Under the pieces are notes generated by a model. It was not told where the DNA came from and searched no databases. It saw nothing but the letters and a program-made list of their open reading frames with translations. 64,000 nt of DNA, taken from the IMG/VR virus record IMGVR_UViG_3300024350_000252, positions 174,048 to 238,047 of that record. One strand, written 5' to 3'. This document shows positions 21,965 through 62,345 of the stretch, one piece after another. Within the stretch, counting starts at the first letter, position 1. Each line of letters opens with the position of its first letter. A program made the translations under genes and the position numbers.

Positions 21965-22003
21965 ATCATTGTATCACTGAACTGGTCATCGATAATTACT
22001 AGC

Positions 22004-23278
22004 ATGATACTAGTAATCGGTGATCTAATCTTAGACGTTTTCCAAAAAGGCAAAAGCCGCAGACTCAGCCCCGAAGCTCCTGTGCCTGTAATAACAGGTA
22101 TGTCGAGAAAAATCTATCCGGGAGGTGCTGCTAATTTAGCACTCAATCTAGCCGACATGGGAATAATAACTACAATCCGTGGACAGCTAGGTCGTGATGA
22201 AGAAGCTTATATATTAGACAATATGATCACACAGCATCCAAATATCAGATCCGCTATAGGATTTCAAGATGATGCTAACACTACTGTAAAAACTAGGATA
22301 ATTGCTAATGGACAGCAGATAGCTAGATTAGACGTAGACGGTATCTATTATCCAATTTCTATATTAGAAGTTTTTGAAAGAGAAGAAATAGAATTTGATA
22401 TAGTTGTAGTCAGCGATTATGATAAAGGTGTTATAGGAGATCTTTCTCAAGAACTTAAAATTTTAAAAGATCGAGGTATACGCACACTCATAGATCCTAA
22501 GAAAGATTTTGATCATTACAAAAATGCTTGGTTGATAAAACCTAATCTAAAAGAGTTTTTTGATTTTGTAGGACCAGCAGAAGATCCAGATCATATGTAT
22601 GATCTAGGTAGTAAAGCTCTTAGAAAATATAATATAGAATATATGTTAGTGACATTAGGTCATCAAGGTATGGCACTGATATCACAACGAGAAATACAAC
22701 ATTTTCCTGCTCTTGAGTGCGATGTTTATGATATCACTGGCGCTGGTGATTCTGCCCTAGCAGGATTAGTCTATGGACTTAATAAAGGAAAGTCTTTAAT
22801 AGACAGTATAGAATTAGCGCAAAAAGCTGCTAGCGTAGCCATTTCACATCATGGTGTTTATAGAGTAACTGAAAAAGAATTAAAAAATAAAACAGTATTT
22901 GCTAATGGTGTCTTCGATATACTACATGCTGGGCATATAAAATTGTTAGAACAAGCACGTAGATTAGGTGATCGATTAATAGTTGGTATCAATTCAGATA
23001 CCAGTGTTAAAAAATTAAAAGGCGATAACCGTCCAATCAACGACGAAAAAACAAGAGCACATACATTAAAACAATTTAGTTGTGTAGATGATGTGATTGT
23101 TTTTGACGAAGATACTCCTTATGACTTGATAAAAAAATTAAAACCTGATATAATAGTCAAGGGAGGCGATTATACTGTAGACCAGGTAGTAGGAAAAGAA
23201 TTGGTAGATGAAGTAGTGATAATACCTCTCGAAGAAGGATACAGTACTACTAAAATAATAGGAAATATAAATGGATAG
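22004..23278 (+). CDS. hldE: Bifunctional heptose-7-phosphate kinase / heptose-1-phosphate adenylyltransferase
   Basis: GDLILD..RLSPEAPVPV..GGAANLA, DITGAGD (PfkB kinase); NGVFDILHAGH..GINSDTSVKKLKG..RPIN (nucleotidyltransferase). Confidence 0.92.
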   Translation: MILVIGDLILDVFQKGKSRRLSPEAPVPVITGMSRKIYPGGAANLALNLADMGIITTIRGQLGRDEEAYILDNMITQHPNIRSAIGFQDDANTTVKTRIIANGQQIARLDVDGIYYPISILEVFEREEIEFDIVVVSDYDKGVIGDLSQELKILKDRGIRTLIDPKKDFDHYKNAWLIKPNLKEFFDFVGPAEDPDHMYDLGSKALRKYNIEYMLVTLGHQGMALISQREIQHFPALECDVYDITGAGDSALAGLVYGLNKGKSLIDSIELAQKAASVAISHHGVYRVTEKELKNKTVFANGVFDILHAGHIKLLEQARRLGDRLIVGINSDTSVKKLKGDNRPINDEKTRAHTLKQFSCVDDVIVFDEDTPYDLIKKLKPDIIVKGGDYTVDQVVGKELVDEVVIIPLEEGYSTTKIIGNING

Positions 23279-23660
23279 GATCACAGGAAAAGTAGATAAA
23301 GGTTGGGGCATGGAATTGATCTGGGCCTCAAATGATGAATATTGCGGAAAGATATTAGTATTCAATAACGCTGGTTCTAAGTTTTCGATGCATTTCCACA
23401 AAGACAAAGACGAAACTTGGTTTGTCAATCAGGGAAGATTTAAAGTGCGTTGGATAGATACTAAGACAGCAGTTTTATACGAAAAAGAACTTAACGAGGG
23501 AGATGTATGGCATAATCCTAGATTACAACCTCATCAGTTAGAAGCTATGGTTGGCAATTCATCTATCACTGAAGTAAGTACAGCCGACAGTCCAGATGAC
23601 AACTATCGTATTATACCCGGAGACAGTCAAGCTGAAATAATGCCCAAGGAAGAAAAATGA
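23271..23660 (+). CDS. Cupin protein (sugar-phosphate isomerase-like)
   Basis: KGWGMELIW..SMHFHKDKDETWFV..QPHQLEA..EVST cupin motifs; overlaps both neighbours. Confidence 0.8.
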   Translation: MDRITGKVDKGWGMELIWASNDEYCGKILVFNNAGSKFSMHFHKDKDETWFVNQGRFKVRWIDTKTAVLYEKELNEGDVWHNPRLQPHQLEAMVGNSSITEVSTADSPDDNYRIIPGDSQAEIMPKEEK

Positions 23661-24523
23661 TCGTAGTTACTGGTGCTGGCGGATTTATCGGATCTAATAT
23701 AGTTCGACGGTTAAACGACCAAGGTCGTGACGATATCATCGTTGTAGATAATGTGATCGATAATCTAAAAGATTGTAAATTCCAAGAACATATTTTGATC
23801 ACGAAATTTTATAGTTTTTTTAAACGCTGGGATCAGGTCGAAATCGTCTATCACGAAGGTGCTGCATCAGATACTACAATACAGATAATGGATGTTTTTT
23901 CTCAGATGAACATCGGTCCTTCTAGATTTCTGCTAGAAAAGAGCAAACATCACGAGTTCTTATTATCAATGGCTTCATCGGCATCTGTTTATGGAAATCA
24001 AAGTAATTTTAAAGAAACAGATGAAATGGATCCTATGTGTCCATATGCTTACAGCAAAGCAGTTATAGATGAAATGATAGACGATGATTTATCTAATGTT
24101 CAGTCATTTAGATATTTTAACGTGTACGGTCCTGCCGAACAGCATAAAAAACATCAGGCTAGCCCAATAACTAAATTTTATCTACAGGCTAAAAAAACAG
24201 GAATGATAGAAATTTTTGAAGGTTCCGAAAATTTCAAAAGAGATTTTGTATGTGTAAATGATTTGATAGATATAAAATTCCGAATGGCAGAAAAGAAAGT
24301 AAAAGGAATTTATAATATCGGTACAGGACAACCAAGATCATTCGCAGAGGTGGCAGAAATAATTGCGAACAAAACTAACGCAGAAATCAAGATCATTCCT
24401 TTCCCTGAAAATCTAAAAAATCAATATCAATCGTATACCTGTGCGGATACAACATTATTGAAATCTGTTATAGGTGAATATCAGTTTACTACTGTCGAAC
24501 AGTACGTTGATAGTCTTGAATAA
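23657..24523 (+). CDS. hldD: ADP-L-glycero-D-manno-heptose 6-epimerase
   Basis: IVVTGAGGFIGSN, HEGAASDT, ASSASVYG, YAYSK, RYFNVYGP, RDFVCVND, YQSYTCAD. Confidence 0.9.
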   Translation: MIVVTGAGGFIGSNIVRRLNDQGRDDIIVVDNVIDNLKDCKFQEHILITKFYSFFKRWDQVEIVYHEGAASDTTIQIMDVFSQMNIGPSRFLLEKSKHHEFLLSMASSASVYGNQSNFKETDEMDPMCPYAYSKAVIDEMIDDDLSNVQSFRYFNVYGPAEQHKKHQASPITKFYLQAKKTGMIEIFEGSENFKRDFVCVNDLIDIKFRMAEKKVKGIYNIGTGQPRSFAEVAEIIANKTNAEIKIIPFPENLKNQYQSYTCADTTLLKSVIGEYQFTTVEQYVDSLE

Positions 24524-24767
24524 AAAATTCAAGATCTTTCTTTGATTCTATTAATTTGAATTTATAAAGATTGTGGTTTTCAAAACCCATCGGTTCGAAT
24601 GCTAGGTTTCCGGCAGATTGATCTAAGTCTCTAGCACAATCTAAAAATCTTTTGTATAGTTTTAGAAAACTATTTTTTGTTTTTTCTTCAGTCAGTGACT
24701 CTAAAAAATTATCGTATTTTGCGCAGTCATTGACATAGTGTATACTATTTCTTATAGACATAGTCAT
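24489..24767 (-). CDS. Hypothetical protein (92 aa)
   Basis: ATGA-coupled to the upstream minus-strand gene; converges on and overlaps hldD by 35 bp. Confidence 0.6.
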   Translation of the reverse strand: MTMSIRNSIHYVNDCAKYDNFLESLTEEKTKNSFLKLYKRFLDCARDLDQSAGNLAFEPMGFENHNLYKFKLIESKKDLEFFIQDYQRTVRQ

Positions 24768-25150
24768 GCTGATTTCTCCATCAACAAAATAGTATCTATC
24801 TTTGTTTGTGTAATCTTGCTAGCTAATGTAGACTTTAAACCGGAATGAAGATTTTTTGGTAATAAGGACATGTTAGCCCAACAAAATGTCTGGTCTGCTT
24901 CTGATATAAATTCTTCTTCTACTAGACAGATATAAGTTGAAAATTCAAAACCTTGATCTTGGCTAAGATACAACTCAATAGGGATCAATCTATAGGCGCT
25001 GCTTTTATACAATGCGATAAGATCTTTTGAATCATCTACAACAGTTGTAGATCTTGAAAATGTTGGCACAGTCCATTTTGAATCATCTAGGATTAACATC
25101 ACTCTAGATGTTTTTTTACTAATAAAAAGTATGCCAGCACGTTTTTGCAT
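24764..25150 (-). CDS. Degenerate Nudix-fold protein
   Basis: RAGILFI..RVMLIL..W start and FCW..LPKNLHSGL end fit a Nudix scaffold, but there is no GX5EX7REUXEEXGU box. Confidence 0.5.
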   Translation of the reverse strand: MQKRAGILFISKKTSRVMLILDDSKWTVPTFSRSTTVVDDSKDLIALYKSSAYRLIPIELYLSQDQGFEFSTYICLVEEEFISEADQTFCWANMSLLPKNLHSGLKSTLASKITQTKIDTILLMEKSA

Positions 25151-25161
25151 ACTATTATGTA

Positions 25162-26616
25162 TCAGGGTTCTAAAATCATTCTCCAGAAACCGGATTGATA
25201 CTCACCTTCGAATGATCTTAGCCACTGTACACCGTCCCACTTGTATTGGATCTTGGTTTTAAGATTTTGTAAGTAACGAATATTTGGATCCTCGGCAGAC
25301 GCAAAGATCACATTCCACCGATTGCCGTTCCACTCTATAATATCGTTGGCATTTGCGACTAAATCTTGATTAGATGTTCCTTTCCAAGCATCAGCACCAT
25401 CAGTATTGATTTCAGATCCTATATCTTCTAGTATAAGATATCTAGTACCTGTTGGAATGTTTGCTTTTCCTTCCCAAAAAGTCAAGGGATTAAATGTTTG
25501 AGGATTGATAATTCCAGTCACATAAGGTATATCAGAATCGTTAGTTGGCAACGTATCCGCAAAGAAGTTGATTACTAGGTAAGTTGGATCAAGCTCGTTG
25601 ATCGTAAATGTACCAACAATTTCATAGCCTGTTTGTTGTAAAAATCTAATTTGGCTGATTCCTGCCTGATATCCGGGATCTCTCTGTAAAATTATTTCCC
25701 AGTTTAATTTTTCACCGCTGTGTACCGGAATGTTTATTAACCCACCTTCGGTAATTTCTGTAGGATCTATTATGCTAAGATAATATTGTCCAGTATCGAC
25801 TCCTGTGACAGCTAGACTAGATAGTAACAATACTTTGAATCTATCAGGAGACAATACTAAACTCTTACCTCCTATATTTGGTTCGTCTGAATTATAAACT
25901 ATATCATTTAAAGTCTTAAGACTACCATCCGAATTCATAACATTCATAACAATACTTTTGACAACGCCTAATTTCTTGACTTTGGCTGGCGGTGAAATAA
26001 ACACAGGCATTTCAAAATCTAATGAACACACATCTATATCCTGTTCCGTGCCTTGAGGTATAGTCCTGCTACTAAAAGAAACATTATTCAGCATCACAGT
26101 GCTCAAACTGGTCCAGTCGATATAGTTGTCTGTGAATTGTACTTCTAGACTAGGGTTGAACAATACTAAAATTTGTTCTAGTATCTGTAGTTTTTGATCA
26201 GTATTACTAGTCCAGATGTCTGCCTTGACAGTCATCTTATATGGAGTAGGCATAAGTCTTTCTACAGTATATCCTCCACCTTGTGCGTTATTGTATTCTA
26301 TAACATTATTTCCGTTTTCATCAGTAACTGTACCGTAATCTCTTTCTCTGATATTAACTTTCGAAACAAAAGATGCATCCGATAATCTTGCTGTGTCTAA
26401 TTCTAATGCGGTGACATAACATGATATTTTAGGTACACTAGGCATCTTATTCTCAGAATTTTCTCTGATAATATTGGCTACCTGTCTGCTTAGATCACCG
26501 TAAGACACTGGTACTTGTTTCAACGTTCCGTCACCGGCTTGATATTTGAAACCGATAAAAATACGCATGAACTGTGTTATGAAACGTCTTATCTGTCCGT
26601 CGTAGAAAAAATCCAT
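25162..26616 (-). CDS. gp15: Tail sheath stabiliser/terminator, T4 gp15-like, C-terminally extended
   Basis: FFYDGQIRRFITQFMRIF..VPVSYG..PTPYK..QILEQILVLFNPS..FEMPVFISPPAKV; adjacent to the neck genes. Confidence 0.75.
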   Translation of the reverse strand: MDFFYDGQIRRFITQFMRIFIGFKYQAGDGTLKQVPVSYGDLSRQVANIIRENSENKMPSVPKISCYVTALELDTARLSDASFVSKVNIRERDYGTVTDENGNNVIEYNNAQGGGYTVERLMPTPYKMTVKADIWTSNTDQKLQILEQILVLFNPSLEVQFTDNYIDWTSLSTVMLNNVSFSSRTIPQGTEQDIDVCSLDFEMPVFISPPAKVKKLGVVKSIVMNVMNSDGSLKTLNDIVYNSDEPNIGGKSLVLSPDRFKVLLLSSLAVTGVDTGQYYLSIIDPTEITEGGLINIPVHSGEKLNWEIILQRDPGYQAGISQIRFLQQTGYEIVGTFTINELDPTYLVINFFADTLPTNDSDIPYVTGIINPQTFNPLTFWEGKANIPTGTRYLILEDIGSEINTDGADAWKGTSNQDLVANANDIIEWNGNRWNVIFASAEDPNIRYLQNLKTKIQYKWDGVQWLRSFEGEYQSGFWRMILEP

Positions 26617-27938
26617 TATTCGTCTGCCTTGGGTCTAAGAGCTTTTGACAGGCTCTGTTTTTCTTTGATAGTTTTACCGTTGATCACGGTAGTTTTTTCG
26701 TTATTAATAAATGTACCTTTTTGGTTCAGTCTTACTTTATCGGTATCAGTAGTGTCAGAGAAACCTGTTTCGCTGACGGTCATCCTTACGTTGTCTGAGT
26801 ATCTGACCCAATTTCTTCCATCGTATCTAAACAATCTCTTAGGAAAGTAATCTGTTCGCAAACAATATTGTCCAGGAACAGGATTAGCTGGAAAATAGAT
26901 ACCGCTGGTAAAAGCAGCACCATTGGGCGGCAGTCCTTCCTCGAGGTACTGTTGATATCCTGGAGCTACAGGGTGTGCTACTATCATGCTGGCATCGTCA
27001 TAAGTTTCTGATGCCGGCACTGTAGTAGTATCAACTGTTTGTAGTGCTATCCTTCCTGTCTCTGGATCTACAGGAACAGTATAATATGTAGTAGTATCAT
27101 ACCCGGCTTTAGGTACATCTAGTTCTGCTTGTTCAAGCACGGCTTGAGTTATACCAAGTTCAGTTTTGTAAGTACTAGTCACATCTCTGAGACTGTCTGC
27201 CAGTTTATAATAATTTGTGTTTGGCGGCGCGATATCTGTTACAGGAGCAGTTACGGTATATTTTTTACCATCTGGACCTGTTACAACATCGCCGATCTGA
27301 TAGGTATAACCAGGACGATACACACCTACATCGCTGTCTGTGTCGGCTATACCGTCTAGTATCTGTTTGAATTCTTGGCTGTCTACCAGTGGAGTACATT
27401 TGGCACGATACAAGTGTGGGTACCAAGTTACTGAAAATCCCTGTGCTGCTCTATTAACTTCTTGAATAACATAAAATCTTTTGAGAGCAAACTTAAGATC
27501 GTTAAGAGCATGATAATCTTTAAGGTGTGGCAATTCTAGTACATCGCCTGGCATAATCTTCCTGCCTAATTTTTCCACAGTATCATTGATGTGGAATGTA
27601 ATGAATACCGTGTCGTTTTGTAAAAATAAACCAAATTGACTGAGATTAAAATCTATATCCTGTATATTGTAATGACCTCGCAAAATGTAAACATTAGGGT
27701 CATATTTTCTATCTCTGTTTTCTAAAAACAGCAAATCTTGTATATGCGTTTCAGGAGTAGAAGTTCCTGTATAATTAGGTAAACTAGGGCTGCTTTCCCC
27801 AGGCAATGGATCTCCAGGACCGGCATATTTGTGTACTAGAACATCCGTACCGCCAACTTGGAACATCTCCCAAATATTGCGGTCAAAAAACTTGTAATCG
27901 TTGCCTTTTTCGGGCTTGTATAAACTGAGTCTTGGCAT
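26616..27938 (-). CDS. gp14: Neck protein, T4 gp14-like
   Basis: DLLFLENRDRKYD..QDIDFNLSQFGLFL..PGDVLELPHL; start moved to ATG at 27938 (MPRLSLY), downstream of GTAAATA at 27946-27952. Confidence 0.75.
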   Translation of the reverse strand: MPRLSLYKPEKGNDYKFFDRNIWEMFQVGGTDVLVHKYAGPGDPLPGESSPSLPNYTGTSTPETHIQDLLFLENRDRKYDPNVYILRGHYNIQDIDFNLSQFGLFLQNDTVFITFHINDTVEKLGRKIMPGDVLELPHLKDYHALNDLKFALKRFYVIQEVNRAAQGFSVTWYPHLYRAKCTPLVDSQEFKQILDGIADTDSDVGVYRPGYTYQIGDVVTGPDGKKYTVTAPVTDIAPPNTNYYKLADSLRDVTSTYKTELGITQAVLEQAELDVPKAGYDTTTYYTVPVDPETGRIALQTVDTTTVPASETYDDASMIVAHPVAPGYQQYLEEGLPPNGAAFTSGIYFPANPVPGQYCLRTDYFPKRLFRYDGRNWVRYSDNVRMTVSETGFSDTTDTDKVRLNQKGTFINNEKTTVINGKTIKEKQSLSKALRPKADE

Positions 27939-27971
27939 AGTATTATATTTACCGCCACGATAAATAACAGT

Positions 27972-28736
27972 ATGAGCCAACTAGATGAAGAAAAACAGAA
28001 GGTCTATGACTATTGTAAGACCATGCTGGGCGACGGCATGATCGACGTCGAACTAGATCCTATACACTATCAAACAGCCCTTGATAGGTCATTAGCTATT
28101 TTTAGGCAAAGATCGGACAATTCTGTAGAAGAATCTTTCGCATATCTAACGCTGGAAATAGACAAAAACGAGTACATACTGCCTAAAGAAATACAGGTAG
28201 TACGTGAAATCTATAGGCGTTCGATAGGTTCTAGATCCGGCGGCGGCACGGGAGGCACAGTATTTGAACCATTCAATCTAGCCTATACAAATACCTATCT
28301 ATTAAGCTCGACAAACATGGGCGGTCTTCTAACTTATGAACTGTTTGCTCAATATCAAGAACGTGTGGGTAAGATGTTCGGTAGCTTCATACAGTTTACA
28401 TGGCATCCACAAACGCACAAACTGACTATACACCAAAGACCGCGTTCTATGGAACAAGTCATGTTATGGGTTTACAATACTCGCCCAGATCATGCTATCT
28501 TGACAGATACGTATGCTAACATATGGATCAAAGATTACACACTAGCTAACTGTAAAATGATGCTAGGACAAGCACGTGAAAAATTCCAAACTATCGCAGG
28601 CCCAGGCGGCGGAACCAGCCTAAACGGGCAAGCATTAAAACAAGAAGCACAAGCAGATATCGAACGACTGACAGCAGAACTGGTCAACTTTGTACCAGGC
28701 ACTGCTATGGCCGGATATACATTCGTTATTGGTTAA
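27972..28736 (+). CDS. gp13: Neck protein, T4 gp13-like
   Basis: LGDGMIDVELDPIHY..WIKDYTLANCKMMLGQAREKF..GPGGGTSLNG. Confidence 0.85.
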   Translation: MSQLDEEKQKVYDYCKTMLGDGMIDVELDPIHYQTALDRSLAIFRQRSDNSVEESFAYLTLEIDKNEYILPKEIQVVREIYRRSIGSRSGGGTGGTVFEPFNLAYTNTYLLSSTNMGGLLTYELFAQYQERVGKMFGSFIQFTWHPQTHKLTIHQRPRSMEQVMLWVYNTRPDHAILTDTYANIWIKDYTLANCKMMLGQAREKFQTIAGPGGGTSLNGQALKQEAQADIERLTAELVNFVPGTAMAGYTFVIG

Positions 28737-28743
28737 ACCACAC

Positions 28744-28793: not shown

Positions 28794-29474
28794 ATGATTA
28801 TAGGTATCTGCGGTTTCATAGGCAGTGGTAAAGACACTATTGCCGACTATCTAGTAAATTTCCATGAATTTAGGCGTGAGAGTTTTGCCAATACTCTCAA
28901 AGATGCGTGTGCGGCTGTGTTTGGCTGGGATCGTACACTGTTAGAAGGAAGAACTAAACAAGCCCGCGAGTGGCGTGAACAGCGCGACGAGTGGTGGAGC
29001 CAACGTCTAGGAATGGATATTACTCCTAGATGGATACTACAATACTGGGGAACTGAGGTTTGCCGCAGGGGTTTCCACGACGATATCTGGATTGCCAGTT
29101 TAGAAAATAAACTGCGTAACAGCAAAGACAATGTTGTTATAAGCGACTGCCGCTTCCCAAACGAAATTACCAGTATCAAGAACGCAGGCGGCAAGATTAT
29201 TTGGGTACAGCGCGGTCCCTTACCGGATTGGTACGATCTTGCTGTTCAAGAAAATGTACACGGCTCTGAAGAAGCTAAGTTTGAATTGATCAAGCGTAAA
29301 GTACACGCCAGCGAAACCAGTTGGGTTGGAACAGATTTTGATGTCATCTTAGACAACAATGGTACTATTGACGAGCTGTATAAACAGGTCAAAAGTCTGG
29401 TGTTAGATCTCCCTGACGCCAACGAACGTTCTCTTTATGTAGGACTCTCTGACAGTTTGCGCATACTGACTTGA
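28794..29474 (+). CDS. gp1: Deoxynucleoside monophosphate kinase (T4 gp1-like)
   Basis: IIGICGFIGSGKDT P-loop, SFANTLKDA, TPRWILQYWGTEVCR, VISDCRFPNE, HASE. Confidence 0.92.
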   Translation: MIIGICGFIGSGKDTIADYLVNFHEFRRESFANTLKDACAAVFGWDRTLLEGRTKQAREWREQRDEWWSQRLGMDITPRWILQYWGTEVCRRGFHDDIWIASLENKLRNSKDNVVISDCRFPNEITSIKNAGGKIIWVQRGPLPDWYDLAVQENVHGSEEAKFELIKRKVHASETSWVGTDFDVILDNNGTIDELYKQVKSLVLDLPDANERSLYVGLSDSLRILT

Positions 29475-29724
29475 GATTGCTAGGGCGGCAATTATCGAGA
29501 TTTTCGTCTATATGATAGACCGCAAAAACTTCTTTGTGAGGAGATTTAAATCCGCATCGATCACACTGAAGTTTCAAACGGTACCCTGCTCTATACCATC
29601 TAGGGATACCGTGATTTTTTCCATGCTTTAGGCAAATTTCACATAGTGACCTATAATAGGTCTTGCCATTTTTATGGTAGTTGACTGCTGCCGGCCTAAA
29701 TCCGCAGCTACAAAGCGGTCTCAT
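29389..29724 (-). CDS. Zn-binding HNH endonuclease-like protein
   Basis: CxC, CxxC, CDRCGF..YHIDENLDNCRPSNLKSVCANC; GGTAAATA 5 nt before the ATG. Confidence 0.75.
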   Translation of the reverse strand: MRPLCSCGFRPAAVNYHKNGKTYYRSLCEICLKHGKNHGIPRWYRAGYRLKLQCDRCGFKSPHKEVFAVYHIDENLDNCRPSNLKSVCANCQRVLHKENVRWRQGDLTPDF

Positions 29725-29830
29725 AAAAATATTTACCCTTTTCTACCCCTTTAGAACTAGTTATAAAGGTACATTTTCTCCAAAACACGCTAAATATTTT
29801 AACAAGATTTAACCTTCAGGAGATAACGGA

Positions 29831-32800
29831 ATGGCCCTTCAATCACCAGGCGTACAGGTTACGGTAGTTAACGAAAGTTACTACACAACAAACACACAGG
29901 GGACAGTACCTCTGTTTGTCGTAGCTACTGCGCAAAACAAGAACAACTCTAGCGGCACAGGTATTGCTGCTGGCACACTAAAAGCAAACGCAGAATCAGT
30001 TTATACAGTAGCTAGTCAAAGAGAGCTATCAGACTATTTTGGAACACCAAAATTCAAGACAGCCATCGACGGCAGTCCGATACACGGTGCTGAACAAAAC
30101 GAATATGGCTTACAAGCAGCATACAGCTTCTTGGGCGTTTCAAATCCTGCTTATATTGTAAGAGCGGATCTAAACCTAAATGAACTAACAGCACAAGATA
30201 AAGCTCCTGGTTCTGAACCAGCAAATGGTCAATGGTGGCTAGATACTGCTAGCACACAATGGGGTATCTTTGAATGGGATTCAACACCCGTTAGATTGAA
30301 TGGCCAAAAATTCGTACACAAAGTACCTACCGTAATCAACGATACTGACGTTGATATGCTAGACGACGTTGGCGGAGTTATGTATCCAAAAGCCAGCGTG
30401 GGCAAGTCAGGAGATTACGCTGTAGTTTCCGCTTCTGATGTGATTAGATATTTTTACAAAGGCACAGATTATACAACTTCAGGTAATCCTATTTCATGGC
30501 AGCTAATCGGTACCAAACAATGGAGAAAGTTTTGGCCAACATTTGTTTCAGCTGGATATAACCCTCCAACAAGTGGTGATATCAGCATAACAATCAATGG
30601 TAGATTAGTAACAGTACCTAACAACAGCACATTAAATGACGTAGTCACTTTGATCAATTCGTTAGTTATCACTGGAGTCAAAGCAGCCAATATTGGTGGA
30701 AATCTAAACTTGTTCGTCACTGACAAGACTGACGATGTAGGCGACTCTACAGACAGTATTTTGATCCTTATGGAGGACAGCACTGTTGGTTCAGTTGCTG
30801 CTTTGTTTGATGTACCAGCAGGCGAATACTTTGGTCCAGAATTGACCATAGCTCCACATACTTCAGTTCCACAGTGGAAGGCCGGAGACTCATATCCAAG
30901 ACCAAGCGGTTCTGTATGGGTTAAATCTACAGATCCAAATCTAGGTGCTAGATACAGGATCAAGAAATATAATTCTTCTACTAAAGCATGGGCAGAAGTG
31001 CGTACAGGCCTAAATGCCACTCCTCAAGCTGCTATCTATGCGTTAGATAGAACAGGTGGCGGAGTTAATATTCCTGTAGATCAAGTATTCGTACAATATA
31101 ACTATTCAGAAGATACTGGATATGATAATACTCCACAAACTACCAGCTTCAAGATTTTCGTAAGAAAGAATGCTGGTGTAAATGCTACAAGTATCACTTC
31201 AGATGCTGTAACTAACCAGCTATCAGCAGGTTCAAAGACTATCTTTATCCGTGAAAGTCTAAAAGGCAGTCCTACACTCGGTCCGGTAACACAGATTAAC
31301 TTTACCGCAGCTGGTAATTCAGCAGATGCTAATGCGATCGCTGTAGCTATCAACTCTTCTTCACTGACCAATATCAGAGCATCTGTTGCATCAGGTAGAT
31401 TGACTATCGTACACACATTAGGTGGCGAATTTAGAATCACTGATACTTCAGGAGCATTGGCTGCGATTGGTTTTACAACATTCAACTATGAAGATGGTTC
31501 AGGTACACCAAATCTATATGCTGTGCCAGCAGGTTCTGTAGTAGACGAAAATGATGTTGAAGTTCTCGAAACTTTCGTAGCATCTAGCTGGTTGCCACTG
31601 GCTGGATCATTGACTGGTTACATTTCTGCTAAGAATGCTCCAGAAGCCGAAGCTAGCGACGGTCAGCTTTGGTATTCGAATGTAGTTAATGAAGTGGATA
31701 TCATGATTCATAACGGAACTACTTGGGTTGGATACCTAGATAGTACTTCACCATACTACAAAGGTTCTTCAAGTCAACAAACAGACCCAAGTGGTCCTAT
31801 CGTAAGTGCTACACGCCCATTGCTACAAAGCGACGGTACAGTATTGGTTACTGGAGACATTTGGATTGATACCAGCGATTTGGAAAATTATCCAGTGATC
31901 TATAGATTTAACAATGATTTATCAGATACTCCTGTAGCAAACAGATGGGTATTGATAGACAACACAGACCATACATCAGAAAATGGTGTATTGTTTGCTG
32001 ATGCTAGAGCAGGAACTACAGGTGGTGATGCTACTACAGCACCATCCGGCACTATCAAAGAATTGTTAGTCAGCAACTTCGTAGATTTCGATGCCCCAGA
32101 TCCAGCACTATATCCACGTGGTATGATGCTATGGAATACACGTCGTAGCGGTTTCAATGTAAAAGTTTATAGACATACTTACGTAGATACCACAGCAGAC
32201 AACATAAGATTCAATGACGAATCGATGGCTCTATACCATAGATCGCGCTGGGTTACAGAATCAGCTGATAAGTTTGGTCGTCATGCTCAGCGTCATGTTG
32301 TAGTAACGGCTCTCAAGAAAGTTATAGCTACTAGCCAGCAGCTAAGGGAAACTGAAGTGAGACAGTTTAACTTGCTAGCTTGCCCAGGCTATCCAGAAGT
32401 ACTACAAAACTTGATCGATCTAAACGCAGATCGTGGCGATACAGCGTTTATCGTTGGTGATTCACCATTCAGATTGCCAGCAGATTCGACTTCATTAACC
32501 AGTTGGGGTACTAACGCAAAAGGCGCAGCAGATAACGATGAAAATTCATTAGTATCTTATGATGCTTATACGGCTGTATTTTATCCAAGCGGATTGACCA
32601 CAGATAACGTGGGCAATTCAGTAGTAGTACCTGCTAGCCACATGATGCTCAAGACTATGGCTGTCAGCGATCAAGTAAGTTACCCATGGTTTGCTCCAGC
32701 AGGTATACGTCGCGGCGCTATTACTAACGCAACATCGGTTGGTTATATCGATAAGACAACCGGATCTTTCAAGACTGTAGCTCTAACAGAAGGACAAAGA

Positions 32801-33254: not shown

Positions 33255-33290
33255 TGGATTGATAAATAATTATAACGGAGCAAAAATAAT

Positions 33291-33932
33291 ATGGCGATTT
33301 CAACACTATCAAAACTAACAGTGCCGTTAGCTTCAGACCAAAGTTCAGCAACTCAAGGTCTGTTGATGCCAAAGCTCAAGTATCGCTTTAGAGTGGTACT
33401 AAGTGGATTTGGTGCTAATGGTTCTGTAGCTACAGAATTAACTAAGCAGGTCGTAGACGTAACTCGTCCTAAGGTCAGCTTTGAAGAAATGGAAATTCCT
33501 ATCTACAACAGCAGAATTTATCTGGCTGGTAGACATCAATGGGAAGCGATCACTTTAAATATCAGAGATGATGCTAGTGGTGCTGTACAGAGACTGTGCG
33601 GTGAGCAGGTACAGAAGCAGTTTGACTTCTTTGAACAGGCATCTGCTGCTTCAGGTCAGGACTATAAATTTACTACCAGAATCGAAATCTTAGATGGTGG
33701 TAACGGCGCACAAACACCAAATGTTCTTGAAACATTTGAAGTATATGGCTGTTTTGTACAAAATATCGATTACGGTGAACTTGCGTATGGTACAAACGAA
33801 GCAGCTCAGATACAGTTGAGCATCAGATATGATAACGCTATCCAGTACAGAGGCGGATCAGTAGATGGCATCGGACGTAACATCGGTGCTAGAACTATCG
33901 GTTCACTAACTACAGGCGGCGGTAATATCTAA
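33291..33932 (+). CDS. gp19: Tail tube protein
   Basis: KYRFRV..VTRPKVSFEE..YLAGRHQWEAITLNIRDD..DY...LSIRYDNA; follows the sheath gene. Confidence 0.9.
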   Translation: MAISTLSKLTVPLASDQSSATQGLLMPKLKYRFRVVLSGFGANGSVATELTKQVVDVTRPKVSFEEMEIPIYNSRIYLAGRHQWEAITLNIRDDASGAVQRLCGEQVQKQFDFFEQASAASGQDYKFTTRIEILDGGNGAQTPNVLETFEVYGCFVQNIDYGELAYGTNEAAQIQLSIRYDNAIQYRGGSVDGIGRNIGARTIGSLTTGGGNI

Positions 33933-33954
33933 AATAATCCGTTGAATTCGCCTT

Positions 33955-33986
33955 AAAAAGCCCAGCTTAAAACCTGGGCTTTTTTT
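33955..33986. terminator. Rho-independent terminator
   Basis: AAAAAGCCCAG-cttaaaac-CTGGGCTTTTTTT. Confidence 0.85.
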
Positions 33987-34002
33987 ATTAATAAATAATG
34001 TT

Positions 34003-35944: not shown

Positions 35945-35952
35945 GTAATTGT

Positions 35953-36426: not shown

Positions 36427-36434
36427 ATATGAGT

Positions 36435-37568: not shown

Positions 37569-37582
37569 CATTAAATATAGTC

Positions 37583-39172: not shown

Positions 39173-39183
39173 TAAATATTAAC

Positions 39184-44525: not shown

Positions 44526-44533
44526 TATAAATA
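44526..44533 (+). promoter_or_regulatory. T4-type late promoter (perfect consensus)
   Basis: TATAAATA-ttgct-ATG (44539). Confidence 0.85.
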
Positions 44534-44538
44534 TTGCT

Positions 44539-50499: not shown

Positions 50500-51305
50500 G
50501 ACACCCAATAGCTTTCTTGTCTGTTTACCCTAAGATCAGTGATTTTGCTTTTTCCTAAGTCTTTTCTAGCACCTTTTAAATGATCTAGGTAAGCTCCCCA
50601 AGCAGAATTTATCAAAGGATGACCTTCACCTTTGATCAAACCTCTACTCCAATCGTGTTGTTTGAGAAAAGGCATCCTTAACCTAACGTCATCAAAAACA
50701 AAACTGTCATGCCACTCTGTAAGACGGAAAATTCCGGTCTCTGCGTGGTCATACATCCTTTGAAATTCTCTTAAAAAATCTAATGTTTGGAGATTTTTAA
50801 GATTCATAGAATACAACCCACATTCGGACCATTTATTTTCTCTACCTAAAAAACATATGTCTTGTTCTTTTGGTATCAATTGTTCAATAGCTACTAAATT
50901 TATGGGACTATGACATATTGTGTCAGCATCCATCCATAATAAAATGTCACTTTCACAGTTTTTAGCACAATGAAATATAGCATAGACCTTATGACTGAAT
51001 CTTACAGCATCCCATCTAAAGCCTATACCGGGCTGTTTACCACCTTTACCGATCGGACCTGTAGCAAGGTTTCCTGTAGCTCGTGGATCATCTTTCCATT
51101 TTTGTTTGAAGGAAACTAATTCAGGACTGCTAGAGTGTAAATCACGTACTACAAGGTTTTTTGCCTGTTCAACTACTTGGCAGTTTTCACTATATGCGTA
51201 CAGCGTAACTTCTTCGGGCCAATTTTTTATAAAACTATTGATCATGTTTCGGCCATATTTTTCATAGCCGGATTGATTGAATGTAGTAACCACGGAAATT
51301 TTCAT
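50496..51305 (-). CDS. GT-A fold nucleotide-diphospho-sugar transferase
   Basis: VVTTFN..WDAVRFSHKV..LWMDADT..ECGLY..EWHDSFVFD..DHLKG; stop codon overlaps the stop of the convergent gene. Confidence 0.8.
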   Translation of the reverse strand: MKISVVTTFNQSGYEKYGRNMINSFIKNWPEEVTLYAYSENCQVVEQAKNLVVRDLHSSSPELVSFKQKWKDDPRATGNLATGPIGKGGKQPGIGFRWDAVRFSHKVYAIFHCAKNCESDILLWMDADTICHSPINLVAIEQLIPKEQDICFLGRENKWSECGLYSMNLKNLQTLDFLREFQRMYDHAETGIFRLTEWHDSFVFDDVRLRMPFLKQHDWSRGLIKGEGHPLINSAWGAYLDHLKGARKDLGKSKITDLRVNRQESYWVS

Positions 51306-51310
51306 ATTGA

Positions 51311-51318
51311 TATTTATA
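51311..51318 (-). promoter_or_regulatory. T4-type late promoter (perfect consensus)
   Basis: Minus strand TATAAATA-tcaat-ATG (51305). Confidence 0.85.
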
Positions 51319-57361: not shown

Positions 57362-58165
57362 ATGCAACTAAATCCGTGTTATTTATATCCAAATAAGATA
57401 GACGTTTACACAAATCTCGAGTCCTGGACTGACAGGAGGCAACGTAAAGTGTATCAAAGAACATTCAAAACTTACCGCGGTTGTGATAATAGATTAGACC
57501 TTCAGGTTAGAAACGGTGATGAAAAACCTAGAAACATTTCAGGGTACACCGCCGTCTTCAATATAGTAGTTATCGACAGTAACGAATTGATTTTACAAAA
57601 AGACTGTGAAATATTAGACGCTACTACAGGTAAGATTTATGTTCGTATCACTGAAACAGAAATGCTAACTCTGACGCAGGGTTCATATCTATTTTCTGTA
57701 TATCTACAAGATGCCAACGGTGTTAAGACTCCTTTATACGGTGATAGCCAATATGGTGCTATAGGTAGATTAGAAGTAGTAGCAGACATGGTAGGTGGTC
57801 CTGTTGCTAGCCAAACTATCAACACTTTCAGTTATCTAGGTCCCGACATACACGGCGATCCTACAGATGTTTACTTCAGCGAAATAGTAGATGCCAAACC
57901 GCAATTCAATAATAACTCCGGACTACACACTTTCGCATTTTATATGACTAACTATTCGGGTGTCGTAACTATACAGGGCACTTTAGAAAATTCTGATAAC
58001 ATATTCGATTGGTGTGACGTTGAAACTATCAACTTCAATGATAGCGGTATCGCTTATGCCAATATCACAGGTATATGGAGCCGTCTAAGAATCAAACATA
58101 TGCCTACACTAGATAGGTTCGGAAATCCTTTAGGGACTATTGACAAAGTATTGTACAGATATTAA
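57362..58165 (+). CDS. Virion protein with BppU-N-like Ig domain
   Basis: LDLQVRNGD.KP.NISGYTAVF..TGKIYVRIT..GSYLFSV pattern; GATAAATA at 57333-57340. Confidence 0.5.
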   Translation: MQLNPCYLYPNKIDVYTNLESWTDRRQRKVYQRTFKTYRGCDNRLDLQVRNGDEKPRNISGYTAVFNIVVIDSNELILQKDCEILDATTGKIYVRITETEMLTLTQGSYLFSVYLQDANGVKTPLYGDSQYGAIGRLEVVADMVGGPVASQTINTFSYLGPDIHGDPTDVYFSEIVDAKPQFNNNSGLHTFAFYMTNYSGVVTIQGTLENSDNIFDWCDVETINFNDSGIAYANITGIWSRLRIKHMPTLDRFGNPLGTIDKVLYRY

Positions 58166-58168
58166 AAT
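58140..58168 (+). promoter_or_regulatory. Sigma70-type promoter for the primase, 6 nt before the ATG
   Basis: TTGACA-17 nt-TAAAAT-gtacta-ATG; no SD. Confidence 0.75.
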
Positions 58169-58174
58169 GTACTA

Positions 58175-59203
58175 ATGAGTCAGGTAGTCGAACTATTTAG
58201 AAAACACTTACCACCTAGAGCTAAACGTACACCCAGCGGCTGGATGAGCTTTAATGCTGTCTGTTGCCATAATAGAGGTGAAAGCCATGATGATCGCAAA
58301 AGAGGTGGGGTGTTATTCAGCGAAGGTTTTACCTATCACTGTTTTAACTGCGGATTCTCAGCTAGTTGGAAACCAGGCAGACCTGTAAGCCAAAAACTAA
58401 GAAATCTAATGACATGGTTGGGTGCTCCCGACGATGATATCAACAAAATGGTCTTTGAAGCCATGAAGACCGAAGCACCTGACTACACGCCCGAAGCACA
58501 TCCTATATTTGCTCGTTTTCCGGAGAAGCAGTTACCTGAAGGCAGCATGACTATCAGCGATTGGATAGAAGCAGAAGTAGATGACGCAGAAGTACAGGAA
58601 AAACTAGCACAGGTAGTAGACTATCTTATACAGCGTGGGTTCGATCCATTAGACAAAAACTTCTGGTGGAGTCCGGCAGATGGATTCAAAGATCGACTGG
58701 TCATACCTTTCTTGTATGACAGTAAAACTGTAGGCTATACAGCACGTAAAGTCACTAATGGTAAGCCCAAATATCTATCAGACCAAAGTCCTCATTTTGT
58801 TTTCAATATCGATTCAGTCACTGAAGATCAGAGATATGTATTTGTATGTGAAGGACCGTTTGACGCACTCAGTCTAGGCGGCATAGCATTACTACACAAC
58901 GAAATCAGTGATGAGCAAGCAAGGCTGATCAACAAGCTGAACAAGACTGTGATAGTGGTGCCTGATCAAGATGAGCCTGGTTTAAAGTTAATCGCTGATG
59001 CTGAAAAGAATGGCTACCATGTGGCATTTCCTAACTGGGAACAGGGCATAAAAGATGCTGCCGACGCTGTGGAAAAATATGGCTCTATTTTCGTCATTAC
59101 AGACGCTATCAATACCGCAGTAGCGGGTAGTGTCAAGATACAGCTATATAAGAAGAAATTAGAAAAACAGCTGAAAAATCCTACGCTACAGGGGTCGCTA
59201 TGA
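58175..59203 (+). CDS. gp61: DNA primase (Zn ribbon plus TOPRIM), T4 gp61-like
   Basis: FNAVCCH..YHCFNCG; RLVIPF..GYTAR..PKYL; VCEGPFDAL; VPDQDEPG; KDAADA. Confidence 0.9.
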   Translation: MSQVVELFRKHLPPRAKRTPSGWMSFNAVCCHNRGESHDDRKRGGVLFSEGFTYHCFNCGFSASWKPGRPVSQKLRNLMTWLGAPDDDINKMVFEAMKTEAPDYTPEAHPIFARFPEKQLPEGSMTISDWIEAEVDDAEVQEKLAQVVDYLIQRGFDPLDKNFWWSPADGFKDRLVIPFLYDSKTVGYTARKVTNGKPKYLSDQSPHFVFNIDSVTEDQRYVFVCEGPFDALSLGGIALLHNEISDEQARLINKLNKTVIVVPDQDEPGLKLIADAEKNGYHVAFPNWEQGIKDAADAVEKYGSIFVITDAINTAVAGSVKIQLYKKKLEKQLKNPTLQGSL

Positions 59204-60301: not shown

Positions 60302-60308
60302 TAATATT

Positions 60309-61736: not shown

Positions 61737-61956
61737 TCGTGTGGAACTGTTTTCTTGGTATCAACAGCAGACAGATACCATAGACGTGCCCTGGGACAGG
61801 GTAGAACAGGCCCTGGGCGATCGCTGGCAGTGGCTACAGCAGCAGCCCCGTCATACCTGCCAAGTCATGGTGGAAAACACACTGGAACAGTATCGTTTGG
61901 TAGCGGAATTTTATCAGGATCAAAAGCTAGCTGAGTATCACTGCTGTTTCGCATAA
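61726..61956 (+). CDS. Hypothetical protein (76 aa)
   Basis: Overlaps the helicase stop; Gln/Trp-rich. Confidence 0.55.
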   Translation: MKHDRVELFSWYQQQTDTIDVPWDRVEQALGDRWQWLQQQPRHTCQVMVENTLEQYRLVAEFYQDQKLAEYHCCFA

Positions 61957-61964
61957 ATATACTC

Positions 61965-62345
61965 ATGAGAGCACATGAATTTATCACTGAAGCTGTACGC
62001 GGCCGTGTACCCCAGGATCTCGTGGACAAAAGCCAGGGTTCTGTCAAACTGACACGCGACACGGGCGGCTACGATCGAGCTTATCATATGAATCGACTGA
62101 TGATGGCCATGGCCATGTCAGATGGGGGTCGAGGCCCTGTGGACATGGACGCAGCTTCATGGTACGAAAAATACAACATCATGTTTCCCTACACAGATCT
62201 AGAAGCTGCCATGGTCAATCAGGCTATCGCTACCATACCCACAGATACCAAGGGCGTGATCGCCCGAGGTAAATCAGTGGAAAATCCCGGCACTAACAAG
62301 ACCAGTCCAGTGGCCCAACAGAAAAAGAATCGTTACGGAGTATAA
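61965..62345 (+). CDS. Hypothetical protein, probable head-internal protein
   Basis: N-terminal MRAHEFITE; CATAAATA 5 nt before the ATG. Confidence 0.7.
   Translation: MRAHEFITEAVRGRVPQDLVDKSQGSVKLTRDTGGYDRAYHMNRLMMAMAMSDGGRGPVDMDAASWYEKYNIMFPYTDLEAAMVNQAIATIPTDTKGVIARGKSVENPGTNKTSPVAQQKKNRYGV

What the first reader, a model, noticed from the sequence alone, without database searches (positions are those of the whole stretch)
21991..61967. Late promoters sit exactly 5 nt before start codons: apparent systematic leaderless late mRNAs
Seen: a TAAATA box or one-mismatch variant, then 5 nt, then ATG with no SD, at 12 genes: 22004 (GATAATTA), 25150- (GATACATA), 27972, 29724-, 34003, 35953 (GATAAGTA), 36435, 37583 (terminase), 39184, 44539, 51305- and 61965. 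A second class (6421, 9743, 14890, sheath 29831, tube 33291, 63431) has the same box, a longer leader and mostly an SD. The primase sigma70 promoter also ends 6 nt before its ATG. Known: the T4 late TATAAATA box lies at about -13 to -6, so +1 would be the A of ATG; T4 late mRNAs are normally leadered. Inference: two-tier expression (leadered for high-copy structural proteins, leaderless for others), a host clue (taxa rich in leaderless mRNA), or independence from SD-based initiation during host shut-off.
Basis: partly seen in the sequence, partly recalled or inferred. Interest (0 to 1): 0.75.

Follow-up and report, generated by a model that had tools for sequence, protein, structure and literature searches.

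The report
Late promoters fused to start codons
In this uncultivated river jumbo phage and hundreds of aquatic relatives, about a third of the T4-type late promoters (and a few ordinary early promoters) sit so close to the ATG that the mRNA can have no ribosome-binding leader. This implies a conserved, gene-specific use of leaderless translation that has not been described for this promoter type.

Summary
In the window TAAATA-N5-ATG occurs 9 times against 1.5 expected. In the 238-kb record 16 of only 92 TAAATA boxes lie exactly 5 nt, and 5 more lie 4 nt, before an ATG.

- **Promoter type:** the phage encodes a gp55-type late sigma, and the boxes have no -35 element. The T4 geometry (box at -13 to -6) puts +1 on the A of ATG.
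- **Early promoters:** four TTGACA-N17-TATAAT promoters, including the primase one, end exactly 6 nt before an ATG. That is the leaderless spacing for that promoter class.
- **Sequence signatures:** these genes lack a Shine-Dalgarno (SD) sequence, always start with ATG and carry a pyrimidine at -1.
- **Conservation:** in 78 freshwater relatives the architecture is held gene by gene, while the spacer sequence drifts.
- **Other late genes:** capsid, sheath and tube keep leaders with strong SD.
- **Range:** a marine sister clade uses 5-8 nt. The cultured relatives PA5oct, CBB, Atu_ph07 and Phosso, and T4 itself, show no such fusion.
- **RNA evidence:** metatranscriptome contigs place transcript ends within about 25 nt of the predictions. 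One contig reaches 6 nt upstream of an ATG.

Verdict: near-certain promoter-to-start fusion, probable leaderless or very short-leader mRNAs, and a new variant of a known strategy.

The parts
27961..27974 (+). Late box TAAATA, N5, then ATG of the head-tail adaptor-like gene 27972..28736
   Evidence: PHROG head-tail adaptor Ad2. 18 of 18 orthologues are of the leaderless type.
29722..29735 (-). Late box, N5, then ATG of the HNH-like gene 29389..29724, in a divergent intergenic region facing the sheath promoter
   Evidence: 38 of 38 orthologues are of the leaderless type. RNA contigs end at 29706, 29706 and 29730. No run covers 29731-29816.
33992..34005 (+). Late box, N5, then ATG of the second tube-like gene 34003..35121, directly after a terminator
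   Evidence: Terminator at 33955-33984. 55 of 55 orthologues are of the leaderless type. RNA contig depth falls about 4- to 14-fold across the terminator.
35942..35955 (+). Variant box TAAGTA, N5, then ATG of the small-terminase-like gene 35953..36426
   Evidence: The variant is conserved in 63 of 63 orthologues, mostly at N4.
36424..36437 (+). Late box, N5, then ATG of the virion protein gene 36435..37010. The TAA of the box is the stop codon of the upstream gene.
   Evidence: 62 of 66 orthologues are of the leaderless type. Relatives lack the alternative ATG at 36429.
37572..37585 (+). Late box, N5, then ATG of the large terminase gene 37583..39172, directly after a terminator hairpin and T-run
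   Evidence: 74 of 77 orthologues are of the leaderless type (N4 to N6), with 29 distinct upstream 22-mers.
39173..39186 (+). Late box, N5, then ATG of the virion structural gene 39184..40842
   Evidence: 69 of 70 orthologues are of the leaderless type.
44528..44541 (+). Late box, N5, then ATG of the nucleotidyltransferase-like gene 44539..45297
   Evidence: 27 of 30 orthologues are of the leaderless type.
51303..51316 (-). Late box, N5, then ATG of gene 50496..51305, in a divergent intergenic region
   Evidence: Independent public assemblies call the same start, giving the identical 269-aa product.
61954..61967 (+). Late box, N5, then ATG of gene 61965..62345
21993..22006 (+). Variant TAATTA, N5, then ATG of gene 22004..23278 (also readable as GATAAT-N7-ATG). 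Promoter class is uncertain.
   Evidence: One distant homologue has TAACTA-N5-ATG and another has TTGACA-N17-TATAAT-N6-ATG.
25148..25161 (-). Variant TACATA, N5, then ATG of gene 24764..25150. Unverified.
   Evidence: No relatives were examined.
58140..58177 (+). Sigma70-type promoter TTGACA-N17-TAAAAT, N6, then ATG of the DNA primase gene 58175..59203
   Evidence: PHROG DNA primase, E 9e-33.
29791..29833 (+). Leadered late promoter of the sheath gene: box 29791-29796, predicted +1 at 29802, SD CAGGAG, ATG 29831
   Evidence: RNA contigs begin at 29817 or 29825 in 4 of 4 runs. The SD is conserved in 39 orthologues.
33263..33293 (+). Leadered late promoter of the tail tube gene: box 33263-33268, SD ACGGAG, ATG 33291
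   Evidence: The SD is conserved in relatives.
33955..33984 (+). Intrinsic terminator that ends the sheath-tube transcript
   Evidence: RNA contigs end at 33943-33957 in 4 of 4 runs.
6395..6423 (+). Leadered late box before gene 6421
9722..9745 (+). Leadered late box before gene 9743
14865..14892 (+). Leadered late box before gene 14890
63396..63433 (+). Leadered late box before gene 63431 (SD TAGGAG)

Best explanation
**Promoter (shown unless marked).** The TAAATA core, with family consensus (A)TAAATA(T), is the -10-type element of late promoters. It is read by host RNA polymerase core carrying the phage's gp55-family sigma. That the sigma is encoded and that no -35 element exists are shown. 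That it binds these boxes is inferred from T4.

**Fusion to the start codon.** At about 20 of roughly 50-55 such promoters in this record, the box has been placed 5 nt (sometimes 4) before the ATG. In the T4 geometry the box occupies -13 to -6, so transcription would start on the A of ATG or within a nucleotide of it. The mRNA would then carry no leader, or one too short to hold a Shine-Dalgarno site. Four sigma70-type early promoters do the same with the 6-nt spacing proper to a -12 to -7 hexamer.

**Translation (inferred).** Translation would start by recognition of the 5'-terminal AUG by ribosomes carrying initiator tRNA. This route is generally less efficient than SD-led initiation.

**Role (inferred).** The phage keeps SD-led leaders for its highest-copy proteins (capsid, sheath, tube). 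It uses promoter-to-ATG fusion for lower-copy late genes and some early genes. Each such gene gets its own compact transcription unit, often terminator-box-ATG with no spare base.

**Evolution (shown).** The arrangement is a stable, gene-specific trait of a large uncultivated aquatic clade related to PA5oct and Rak2-type jumbo phages.
For: 1. **Spacing spike.** The window has 9 sites against 1.5 expected. The record has N5 = 16 and N4 = 5 of 92 boxes. In 78 freshwater relatives 344 of 925 boxes lie at N5, and 334 of those open at least 60 codons. A complete 364-kb relative has 15 sites at N5 and 11 at N4 among 40 hits at N2-9.
2. **Two promoter classes, each at its own leaderless spacing.** Late boxes sit at N5. 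TTGACA-N17-TATAAT promoters sit at N6 in 4 cases, with none at spacings 4, 5 or 7-18. The T4 box spans -13 to -6.
3. **Late sigma.** A gp55-type sigma lies at genome 131352-132215: tblastn E 2e-6 and PHROG 'sigma factor for late transcription' E 1.5e-77. There is no -35 conservation, and the spacer is 65-70% A+T.
4. **No SD.** Mean anti-SD duplex energy is -0.3 kcal/mol for the fused genes and -4.5 for the other genes (p = 4e-8). All 22 fused starts are ATG, and no GTG or TTG follows a box at N5 with a long frame.
5. **Pyrimidine at -1.** It is found in 16 of 18 fused genes against 80 of 196 others (p = 9e-5). This is a start-site signature, not a translational one.
6. **Gene-by-gene conservation with a drifting spacer.** Leaderless-type orthologues number 69 of 70, 55 of 55, 62 of 66, 38 of 38, 18 of 18, 27 of 30 and 74 of 77. 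SD-led neighbours score 0 of about 60 each. Entropy is 0 in the box, 1.1-1.4 bits at -5 to -2, and 0.44 at -1. Codon periodicity begins at codon 2.
7. **RNA contigs from 4 river metatranscriptomes.**
   - The sheath-tube transcript runs from 15-23 nt after the predicted +1 to the predicted terminator.
   - The 86 nt between the end of the 29724- transcript (29730) and the first sheath-transcript contig (29817) are silent in all runs.
   - Coverage of the 29724- gene stops at or within 6 nt of its ATG.
8. **High-copy genes are SD-led.** This holds for capsid, sheath and tube.
Against: - No start site is mapped at nucleotide resolution.
- One contig (run X26) reaches 29730, 6 nt upstream of the 29724 ATG and into the last base of the box. 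A transcript starting exactly at the A would not give this.
- One contig (run X22) starts 25 nt upstream of the 34003 ATG. This may be terminator read-through.
- No gp33 homologue was found, and only a doubtful gp45 hit. The T4 start-site geometry may therefore not transfer exactly.
- The marine sister clade uses N5 to N8. Strict +1 = A therefore cannot hold everywhere, and very short leaders are likely there.
- The host, and its capacity for leaderless translation, are unknown.
- No phage IF1, IF3, S1 or S21 was found in the 238-kb fragment.
Confidence: 0.7

Rival explanations
1. The boxes are late promoters, but the working mRNAs are not leaderless. Transcripts come mainly from upstream promoters or terminator read-through, or start a few to some tens of nucleotides upstream. 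The ATGs would then be used internally by SD-independent initiation (A/U-rich, S1-dependent, or stop-start coupling). The tight spacing would reflect genome compaction.
For: - The X26 contig reaches 6 nt upstream of the 29724 ATG, and the X22 contig starts 25 nt upstream of the 34003 ATG.
- Several fused sites lie right after the stop codon of an upstream co-directional gene (36435, 39184, 44539, 61965).
- The marine clade tolerates N5 to N8.
Against: - Compaction alone does not predict a single preferred spacing that differs by one nucleotide between the two promoter classes, exactly as their start-site geometry does.
- It does not predict a pyrimidine at -1.
- It does not predict fusion in divergent intergenic regions, or after terminators and tRNAs, where nothing can be coupled.
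- No alternative promoter is predicted upstream of 29724-.
- The region upstream of that box is silent in 4 of 4 runs.
Confidence: 0.18
2. The A/T-rich hexamer acts in the RNA as a translation signal at a fixed distance from AUG. It would be a non-SD ribosome or S1 binding site rather than a promoter.
For: - The distance to the ATG is fixed and SD is absent.
- A/U-rich enhancers of translation are known in bacteria (general knowledge).
Against: - The identical box drives SD-led genes from 14-40 nt upstream, where it cannot be at a fixed distance.
- The box is depleted genome-wide like a promoter word.
- A cognate gp55-type sigma is encoded.
- Sigma70-type promoters with a -35 element show the same fusion at N6.
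- RNA contigs do not cover the box of the sheath promoter, or the region upstream of the 29724- box.
Confidence: 0.05
3. Chance, composition or wrongly chosen start codons.
For: The three one-mismatch variants, and some one-mismatch hits elsewhere in the record, could be chance.
Against: - No shuffle out of 100 reaches the observed count.
- The family-wide spike is 344 at N5.
- The ATG is invariant, and codon periodicity begins at codon 2.
- tblastn alignments reach residue 1 in 80 of 80 terminase loci.
- Independent assemblies call the same start.
Confidence: 0.02

Closest known systems
Bacteriophage T4 late promoters (TATAAATA, gp55/gp33/gp45)
   Same: - The core box is the same and there is no -35 element.
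- The segment downstream of the box is A/T-rich.
- A gp55-family sigma is encoded.
- The boxes precede structural and late genes.
   Different: - T4 shows no box-to-ATG fusion: 4 hits at N0-12 against 9 in the control. Its late mRNAs are leadered.
- Here the conserved core is 6-7 nt, not 8.
- The sigma is 287 aa, with an N-terminal extension.
- No gp33 homologue was found.
Thermus phages phiYS40 and Lalka27a
   Same: [quoted passage not shown] A phage-specific late -10 element is involved (preprint 10.64898/2026.04.20.719267, citing Sevostyanova et al. 2007).
   Different: - There, most transcripts are leaderless, and the host phylum is itself rich in leaderless mRNA (PMC12340547).
- Here only about a third of late promoters, and roughly 10% of genes, are fused.
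- The promoter type is T4-like.
- SD-led genes coexist in the same late class.
Host -10 motif adjacent to ORFs in Deinococcus-Thermus (PMC12340547)
   Same: [quoted passage not shown] A separate class of genes has GGAG ribosome-binding sites.
   Different: That is a cellular, sigma-A-dependent genome-wide pattern. Here it is viral and mostly gp55-type. The cellular bins that hold relatives show little or no comparable signal.
PA5oct, CBB/GAP32 (Rak2-like), Atu_ph07 and Phosso jumbo phages
   Same: - They are the nearest cultured relatives by terminase (46-54% aa).
- They share the predicted ATAAATA late motif and a gp55-like sigma.
- They share the synteny of sheath, tube, tube-like protein, terminase and virion genes.
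   Different: Their late boxes sit 20-40 nt upstream with clear SD sites. They show little excess of ATAAATA-N5-ATG: 8 against 4 in the control, 2 against 0, 5 against 2, and 0 against 0.

Membership tests
T4-type late transcription (gp55-dependent promoters) | A gp55-family sigma is encoded | tested here: met
   tblastn with T4 gp55, E 2e-6. PHROG 12791 'sigma factor for late transcription', E 1.5e-77, and PHROG 234, E 3e-24.
T4-type late transcription (gp55-dependent promoters) | A conserved TATAAATA-like box without a -35 element, followed by an A/T-rich segment | tested here: met
   48 boxes were aligned. Information content is confined to (A)TAAATA(T), with none at -35, and the next 5 nt are 65-70% A+T. 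The first T of the T4 octamer is not conserved.
T4-type late transcription (gp55-dependent promoters) | The box lies at -13 to -6 relative to the mapped start site | tested here: inconclusive
   RNA contigs start 21-29 nt after the sheath box and stop 0-24 nt from the 29724- box. The resolution is too coarse to decide.
T4-type late transcription (gp55-dependent promoters) | gp33 co-activator and gp45 sliding clamp | tested here: inconclusive
   tblastn with T4 gp33 gives a best E of 1.1, and gp45 a best E of 0.49. A gp44 clamp-loader homologue is present (E 4e-27). Both proteins are small and divergent, and the record is about 67% complete.
Leaderless mRNA | The primary 5' end lies on, or within a few nt of, the start codon | tested here: inconclusive
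   Only contig ends are available. They lie at 29706, 29706 and 29730 for the ATG at 29724, and at 34025-34085 (once 33978) for the ATG at 34003. Read-level mapping is not possible with these tools.
Leaderless mRNA | The promoter -10 element lies at the fixed start-site distance from the start codon | tested here: met
   N5 (N4) for late boxes and N6 for sigma70 hexamers
Leaderless mRNA | No Shine-Dalgarno sequence, and an AUG start | tested here: met
   Duplex energy is -0.3 against -4.5 kcal/mol. 22 of 22 starts are ATG.
Leaderless mRNA | Translation starts at the 5'-terminal AUG | not testable with these tools
   There is only indirect support: the ATG is invariant, and codon-position periodicity begins at codon 2 across relatives.
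phiYS40-type phage strategy (most middle and late transcripts leaderless) | The majority of phage transcripts are leaderless | tested here: not met
   About 20 of roughly 50-55 late boxes, and 4 of 22 sigma70-type promoters that have an ORF-opening ATG within 150 nt, are fused. Capsid, sheath and tube are SD-led.

The most novel reading that the evidence does not exclude
A very large, uncultivated aquatic clade of jumbo phages has evolved promoter-to-start-codon fusion as a heritable, gene-specific way to set translation level, built on gp55-type late promoters. More than 500 IMG/VR relatives matched each of the two terminase queries. Cultured relatives on Pseudomonas, Agrobacterium and enterobacteria lack the fusion. 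This would mean one of two things. Either the unknown hosts (possibly streamlined freshwater or marine proteobacteria) translate leaderless mRNA far better than textbook proteobacteria. Or the phage supplies a helper, for example the tRNA(CAT) with a 1:72 mismatch in its 28-tRNA array.
Probability: 0.2. Interest if true: 0.8.

Novelty: new variant of a known kind. Interest (0 to 1): 0.6.

Why it matters
- **For T4-type transcription.** If the start sites are confirmed, T4-type late transcription can be coupled directly to SD-independent translation. Full-text searches found no paper that links TATAAATA-type promoters or jumbo phages with systematic leaderless mRNAs.
- **For annotation.** It gives a simple sequence rule (box-N5-ATG) for start codons and transcription units in hundreds of environmental jumbo-phage contigs.
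- **For expression control.** It offers a natural two-tier expression design: SD-led for capsid, sheath and tube, and fused for low-copy genes.
- **For host biology.** It gives a handle on the translation biology of an abundant but unknown aquatic host.
- **For gene callers.** Callers that expect an SD may misplace starts in this clade.

Tried and rejected
- **RNA contigs in JGI metagenome contigs.** An exact 26-mer just inside gene 34003 found only one 354,650-bp DNA contig.
- **The look-up of encoding contigs for the 51305- protein.** It returned only long DNA contigs of 229-253 kb, with no transcript contigs.
- **Host assignment.**
  - The genome-contig scan found relatives binned with Polynucleobacter, Betaproteobacteria TMED41 and Crocinitomicaceae MAGs. 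These are inconsistent, and binning is weak evidence.
  - TATAAT-N6-ATG in those MAGs gave 25 against 18, 30 against 12 and 68 against 60 in the control. That is no clear leaderless signature, and phage contigs in the bins may contribute.
- **Phage-encoded translation factors.** IF3_C, IF1, S1 and S21 are absent from the 238-kb fragment.
- **5' coding-region features.** Folding energy and A-content of the 5' coding region do not differ between the classes.
- **Whole-record pattern search on the 354-kb contig.** The record is not held.
- **Sigma70-type fusion in relatives' late regions.** There are too few such promoters there to say anything.
- **Rejected readings.**
  - The ATG as part of the promoter consensus: leadered boxes have no ATG at +1.
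  - An upstream sigma70 promoter for 29724-: none is predicted.


Full report
**What the sequence is.** The window is the last 64 kb of a 238,047-bp, 40% G+C virus record.
- It comes from a river metagenome series. DNA and metatranscriptome runs of many samples hold it.
- CheckV rates it 67% complete. A 354,650-bp contig carries an identical 26-mer, and a complete relative is 363,943 bp. The full genome is therefore probably about 355 kb.
- By terminase the nearest cultured phages are Pseudomonas phage PA5oct (54% aa), then Phosso, Atu_ph07 and the Rak2-like CBB/GAP32 group. Gene order around the sheath, tube, second tube-like protein, terminase and virion genes matches PA5oct.

**The observation.**
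- Exact TAAATA-N5-ATG occurs 9 times in the window, against 1.47 +/- 1.34 in dinucleotide shuffles (0 of 100 reach 9).
- In the whole record TAAATA is a rare word: 92 copies on both strands, against about 347 expected from composition.
- Sixteen boxes lie exactly 5 nt, and five lie 4 nt, before an ATG. Spacings 0-3 and 6-14 hold 0-3 each. A second hump at 15-29 nt is the leadered class.
- Fourteen of the sixteen N5 ATGs open frames of at least 60 codons, and most are the first ATG of the frame.
- No GTG or TTG with a long frame follows a box at N5.

**What the box is.**
- The record encodes a gp55-family late sigma at genome 131352-132215 (tblastn E 2e-6; PHROG 'sigma factor for late transcription' E 1.5e-77).
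- Forty-eight aligned boxes show information only in (A)TAAATA(T). Nothing is conserved at -35, and the next 5 nt are 65-70% A+T. This is how T4 late promoters are described (PMC2988020).
- The same ATAAATA motif and a gp55-like sigma were predicted for CBB and GAP32 (PMC5259590).
- In T4 the first T of the octamer is -13, so the box ends at -6. With N5, +1 is therefore the A of ATG.

**A second, independent promoter class gives the same answer.**
- Among 65 TTGACA-N16-18-TATAAT-like sites, four have the -10 hexamer exactly 6 nt before an ATG that opens a long frame. None has it at 4, 5 or 7-18 nt.
- A hexamer at -12 to -7 followed by 6 nt again puts +1 on the A.
- The two classes differ by one nucleotide in spacing, in the direction their start-site geometries predict. 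This is hard to explain by anything other than selection on the position of the transcript 5' end. It also shows that the habit is not restricted to late genes.

**Sequence signatures of the fused genes.**
- They have no Shine-Dalgarno (SD) sequence. Mean anti-SD duplex energy is -0.3 kcal/mol (n = 18), against -4.5 for the other 229 genes and -1.7 for random positions (p = 4e-8).
- The base at -1 is T or C in 16 of 18, against 80 of 196 other genes, where A dominates (p = 9e-5). This fits the pyrimidine(-1)/purine(+1) preference of RNA polymerase, which is general knowledge.
- Folding energy and A-content of the first 40 nt do not differ between the classes.

**Conservation.** A terminase scan of IMG/VR found 572 relatives. 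The 78 non-identical loci among the 80 best kept (83-88% aa) total 1.14 Mb.
- In them 344 of 925 boxes are at N5, and 334 of those open long frames. N4 has 31 and N6 has 15.
- The architecture is held gene by gene.

| Gene (ATG position in the window) | Leaderless-type orthologues |
|---|---|
| 39184 | 69 of 70 |
| 34003 | 55 of 55 |
| 36435 | 62 of 66 |
| 29724- | 38 of 38 |
| 27972 | 18 of 18 |
| 44539 | 27 of 30 |
| Terminase 37583 | 74 of 77 |
| 35953 (variant TAAGTA) | 63 of 63 |

- Neighbouring genes 35504, 37007, 41478, 42722, 43798 and others show the fusion in no orthologue, out of 48 to 64 each. Sheath and tube keep CAGGAG-type SD sites.
- Across distinct sequences, entropy is 0 in the box, 1.1-1.4 bits at -5 to -2, 0.44 at -1 and 0 in the ATG. 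From codon 2 on it is 0.56, 0.41 and 1.11 for codon positions 1, 2 and 3. The spacer length is therefore under selection while its sequence is not, and the ATG is a translated start.
- Three relatives have replaced the terminase promoter by an SD-led junction. The two solutions are therefore interchangeable in evolution.
- A marine sister clade (terminase 66% aa, 80 loci) has boxes at N5 (140), N6 (153), N7 (99) and N8 (85) before long frames. That means no leader or a very short one.
- PA5oct, Phosso, Atu_ph07, CBB and T4 show no such enrichment, and their late genes are leadered with SD. The fusion is a derived trait of the aquatic clades.

**Which genes.**
- Fused: head-tail adaptor, second tube-like protein, small-terminase-like protein, large terminase, several virion proteins, an HNH-like protein, two nucleotidyltransferase-like proteins, a kinase-like protein and unknowns.
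- Leadered with SD: sheath, tube, baseplate parts, giant proteins, and the head-gene operon that carries the Gp23-family major capsid gene (AAGGAG).
It does not fit the idea that late translation has become independent of SD.

**RNA evidence (contigs of four metatranscriptomes, no strand information).**
- A single contig runs from 29817 or 29825 to 33943-33957 in all four runs. It begins 15-23 nt after the predicted sheath +1 (29802) and ends at the predicted terminator (33955-33984).
- Depth then drops from 10-36 to about 1-7 over gene 34003.
- No run covers 29731-29816, the stretch between the end of the 29724- transcript and the first sheath-transcript contig. DNA carry-over is therefore low, and neither gene has a long leader.
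- For the 29724- gene, contigs end at 29706 (twice) and at 29730. The last is 6 nt upstream of the ATG, on the final base of the box. A transcript starting exactly on the A would not give this.
- For 34003, contigs start at 34025, 34039 and 34085, and once at 33978. The last lies inside the terminator and may be read-through.
- Promoter and terminator positions are thus borne out to within about 25 nt. The single-nucleotide claim is untested, and one datum speaks against strictness. Any start between the box and the ATG still leaves no room for an SD.

**Mechanism and rivals.**
- I take promoter-to-start fusion as shown.
- Leaderless or near-leaderless mRNAs, translated from the 5'-proximal AUG, are the most likely consequence (0.7).
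- The main rival is that transcripts from upstream carry these ATGs internally and use SD-independent initiation (0.18). It fails to explain the class-specific spacing, the pyrimidine at -1, and the fusion after terminators and tRNAs and in divergent regions.
- A purely translational role of the hexamer (0.05) and chance (0.02) are contradicted by the data above.

**Comparison with the known.**
- Leaderless phage mRNAs are known: phiYS40 and Lalka27a of Thermus and lambda cI (general knowledge).
- Host -10 motifs adjacent to ORFs are described for Deinococcus-Thermus (PMC12340547).
- T4-type late promoters are textbook.
- Full-text searches found no paper combining the two. The PA5oct transcriptome paper reports only sigma70-like promoters.
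- I file this as a new variant of a known kind.

**Limits.**
- The host is unknown.
- The record is a fragment.
- My gene calls are heuristic. They dropped the 29724- frame, which overlaps a convergent gene by 86 nt but has weak HNH matches and conserved orthologues.
- Relatives are not independent samples.
- The 22004 and 25150- variants are unverified.

Noticed in passing
genome 122-9870 (outside the window; locus L089): An array of 28 tRNA genes. Late boxes abut the 3' ends of two of them (box-N5-ATG at genome 885 and 4069). tRNA number 21 (7707-7781, anticodon CAT) has an A1:A72 mismatch and two of the three G-C pairs typical of bacterial initiator tRNAs. It is a possible phage initiator-like tRNA, which would be relevant to leaderless initiation.
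   Followed up: partly
whole record; L185; G004: The 238-kb record is probably about two thirds of a genome of about 355 kb. CheckV gives 67%, a 354,650-bp contig carries an identical 26-mer, and a complete relative is 363,943 bp.
   Followed up: partly
window 33469-33828 (tail tube gene): In two metatranscriptomes a contig matches only about 21-23 nt on each side and replaces 358 nt with 361 other letters. A co-occurring, expressed variant of the tube gene has a divergent central segment.
   Followed up: no
window 27936-27951 (-) and 63377-63392 (-): There are two further near-fused sites at N7 (TAAATA-N7-ATG), each in a back-to-back pair of divergent late boxes. The 26616..27980 frame probably starts at the ATG at 27938 rather than the TTG at 27980. 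The other site opens the 72-aa frame 63161..63379.
   Followed up: partly
genome 28357/28375, 34796/34802, 138591/138616, 231382/231432, 237439/237443: Late boxes often occur as overlapping or adjacent divergent pairs, so that one short A/T-rich stretch serves both strands.
   Followed up: no
genome 61364-61412 (locus L092): TAAATA-N4-ATG opens only a 12-codon frame just upstream of a 382-aa SD-led gene. It may be a leaderless mini-ORF or a chance ATG in a leader.
   Followed up: no
genome 131352-132215 (locus L095): The gp55-like sigma is 287 aa, about 100 aa longer than T4 gp55. T4 gp55 matches only its C-terminal half, residues 158-261 in PHROG 234. No gp33 homologue was found. The extension might take over a gp33-like role.
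   Followed up: no
window 28794-29724: The + gene 28794..29474 and the HNH-like - gene 29389..29724 converge and overlap by 86 nt. One RNA contig spans 29279-29730.
   Followed up: no
window 1-6057, 15446-21964, 29831-33229; genome 107317-122142: Very large genes: frames of 4,941 aa, 2,172 aa and at least 2,018 aa, and an unusually long tail sheath of 1,132 aa.
   Followed up: no
loci L006, L022, L052: Three relatives have lost the terminator-box-ATG unit before the terminase gene. They use an SD-led or overlapping junction instead, which shows that the two architectures can replace each other.
   Followed up: partly
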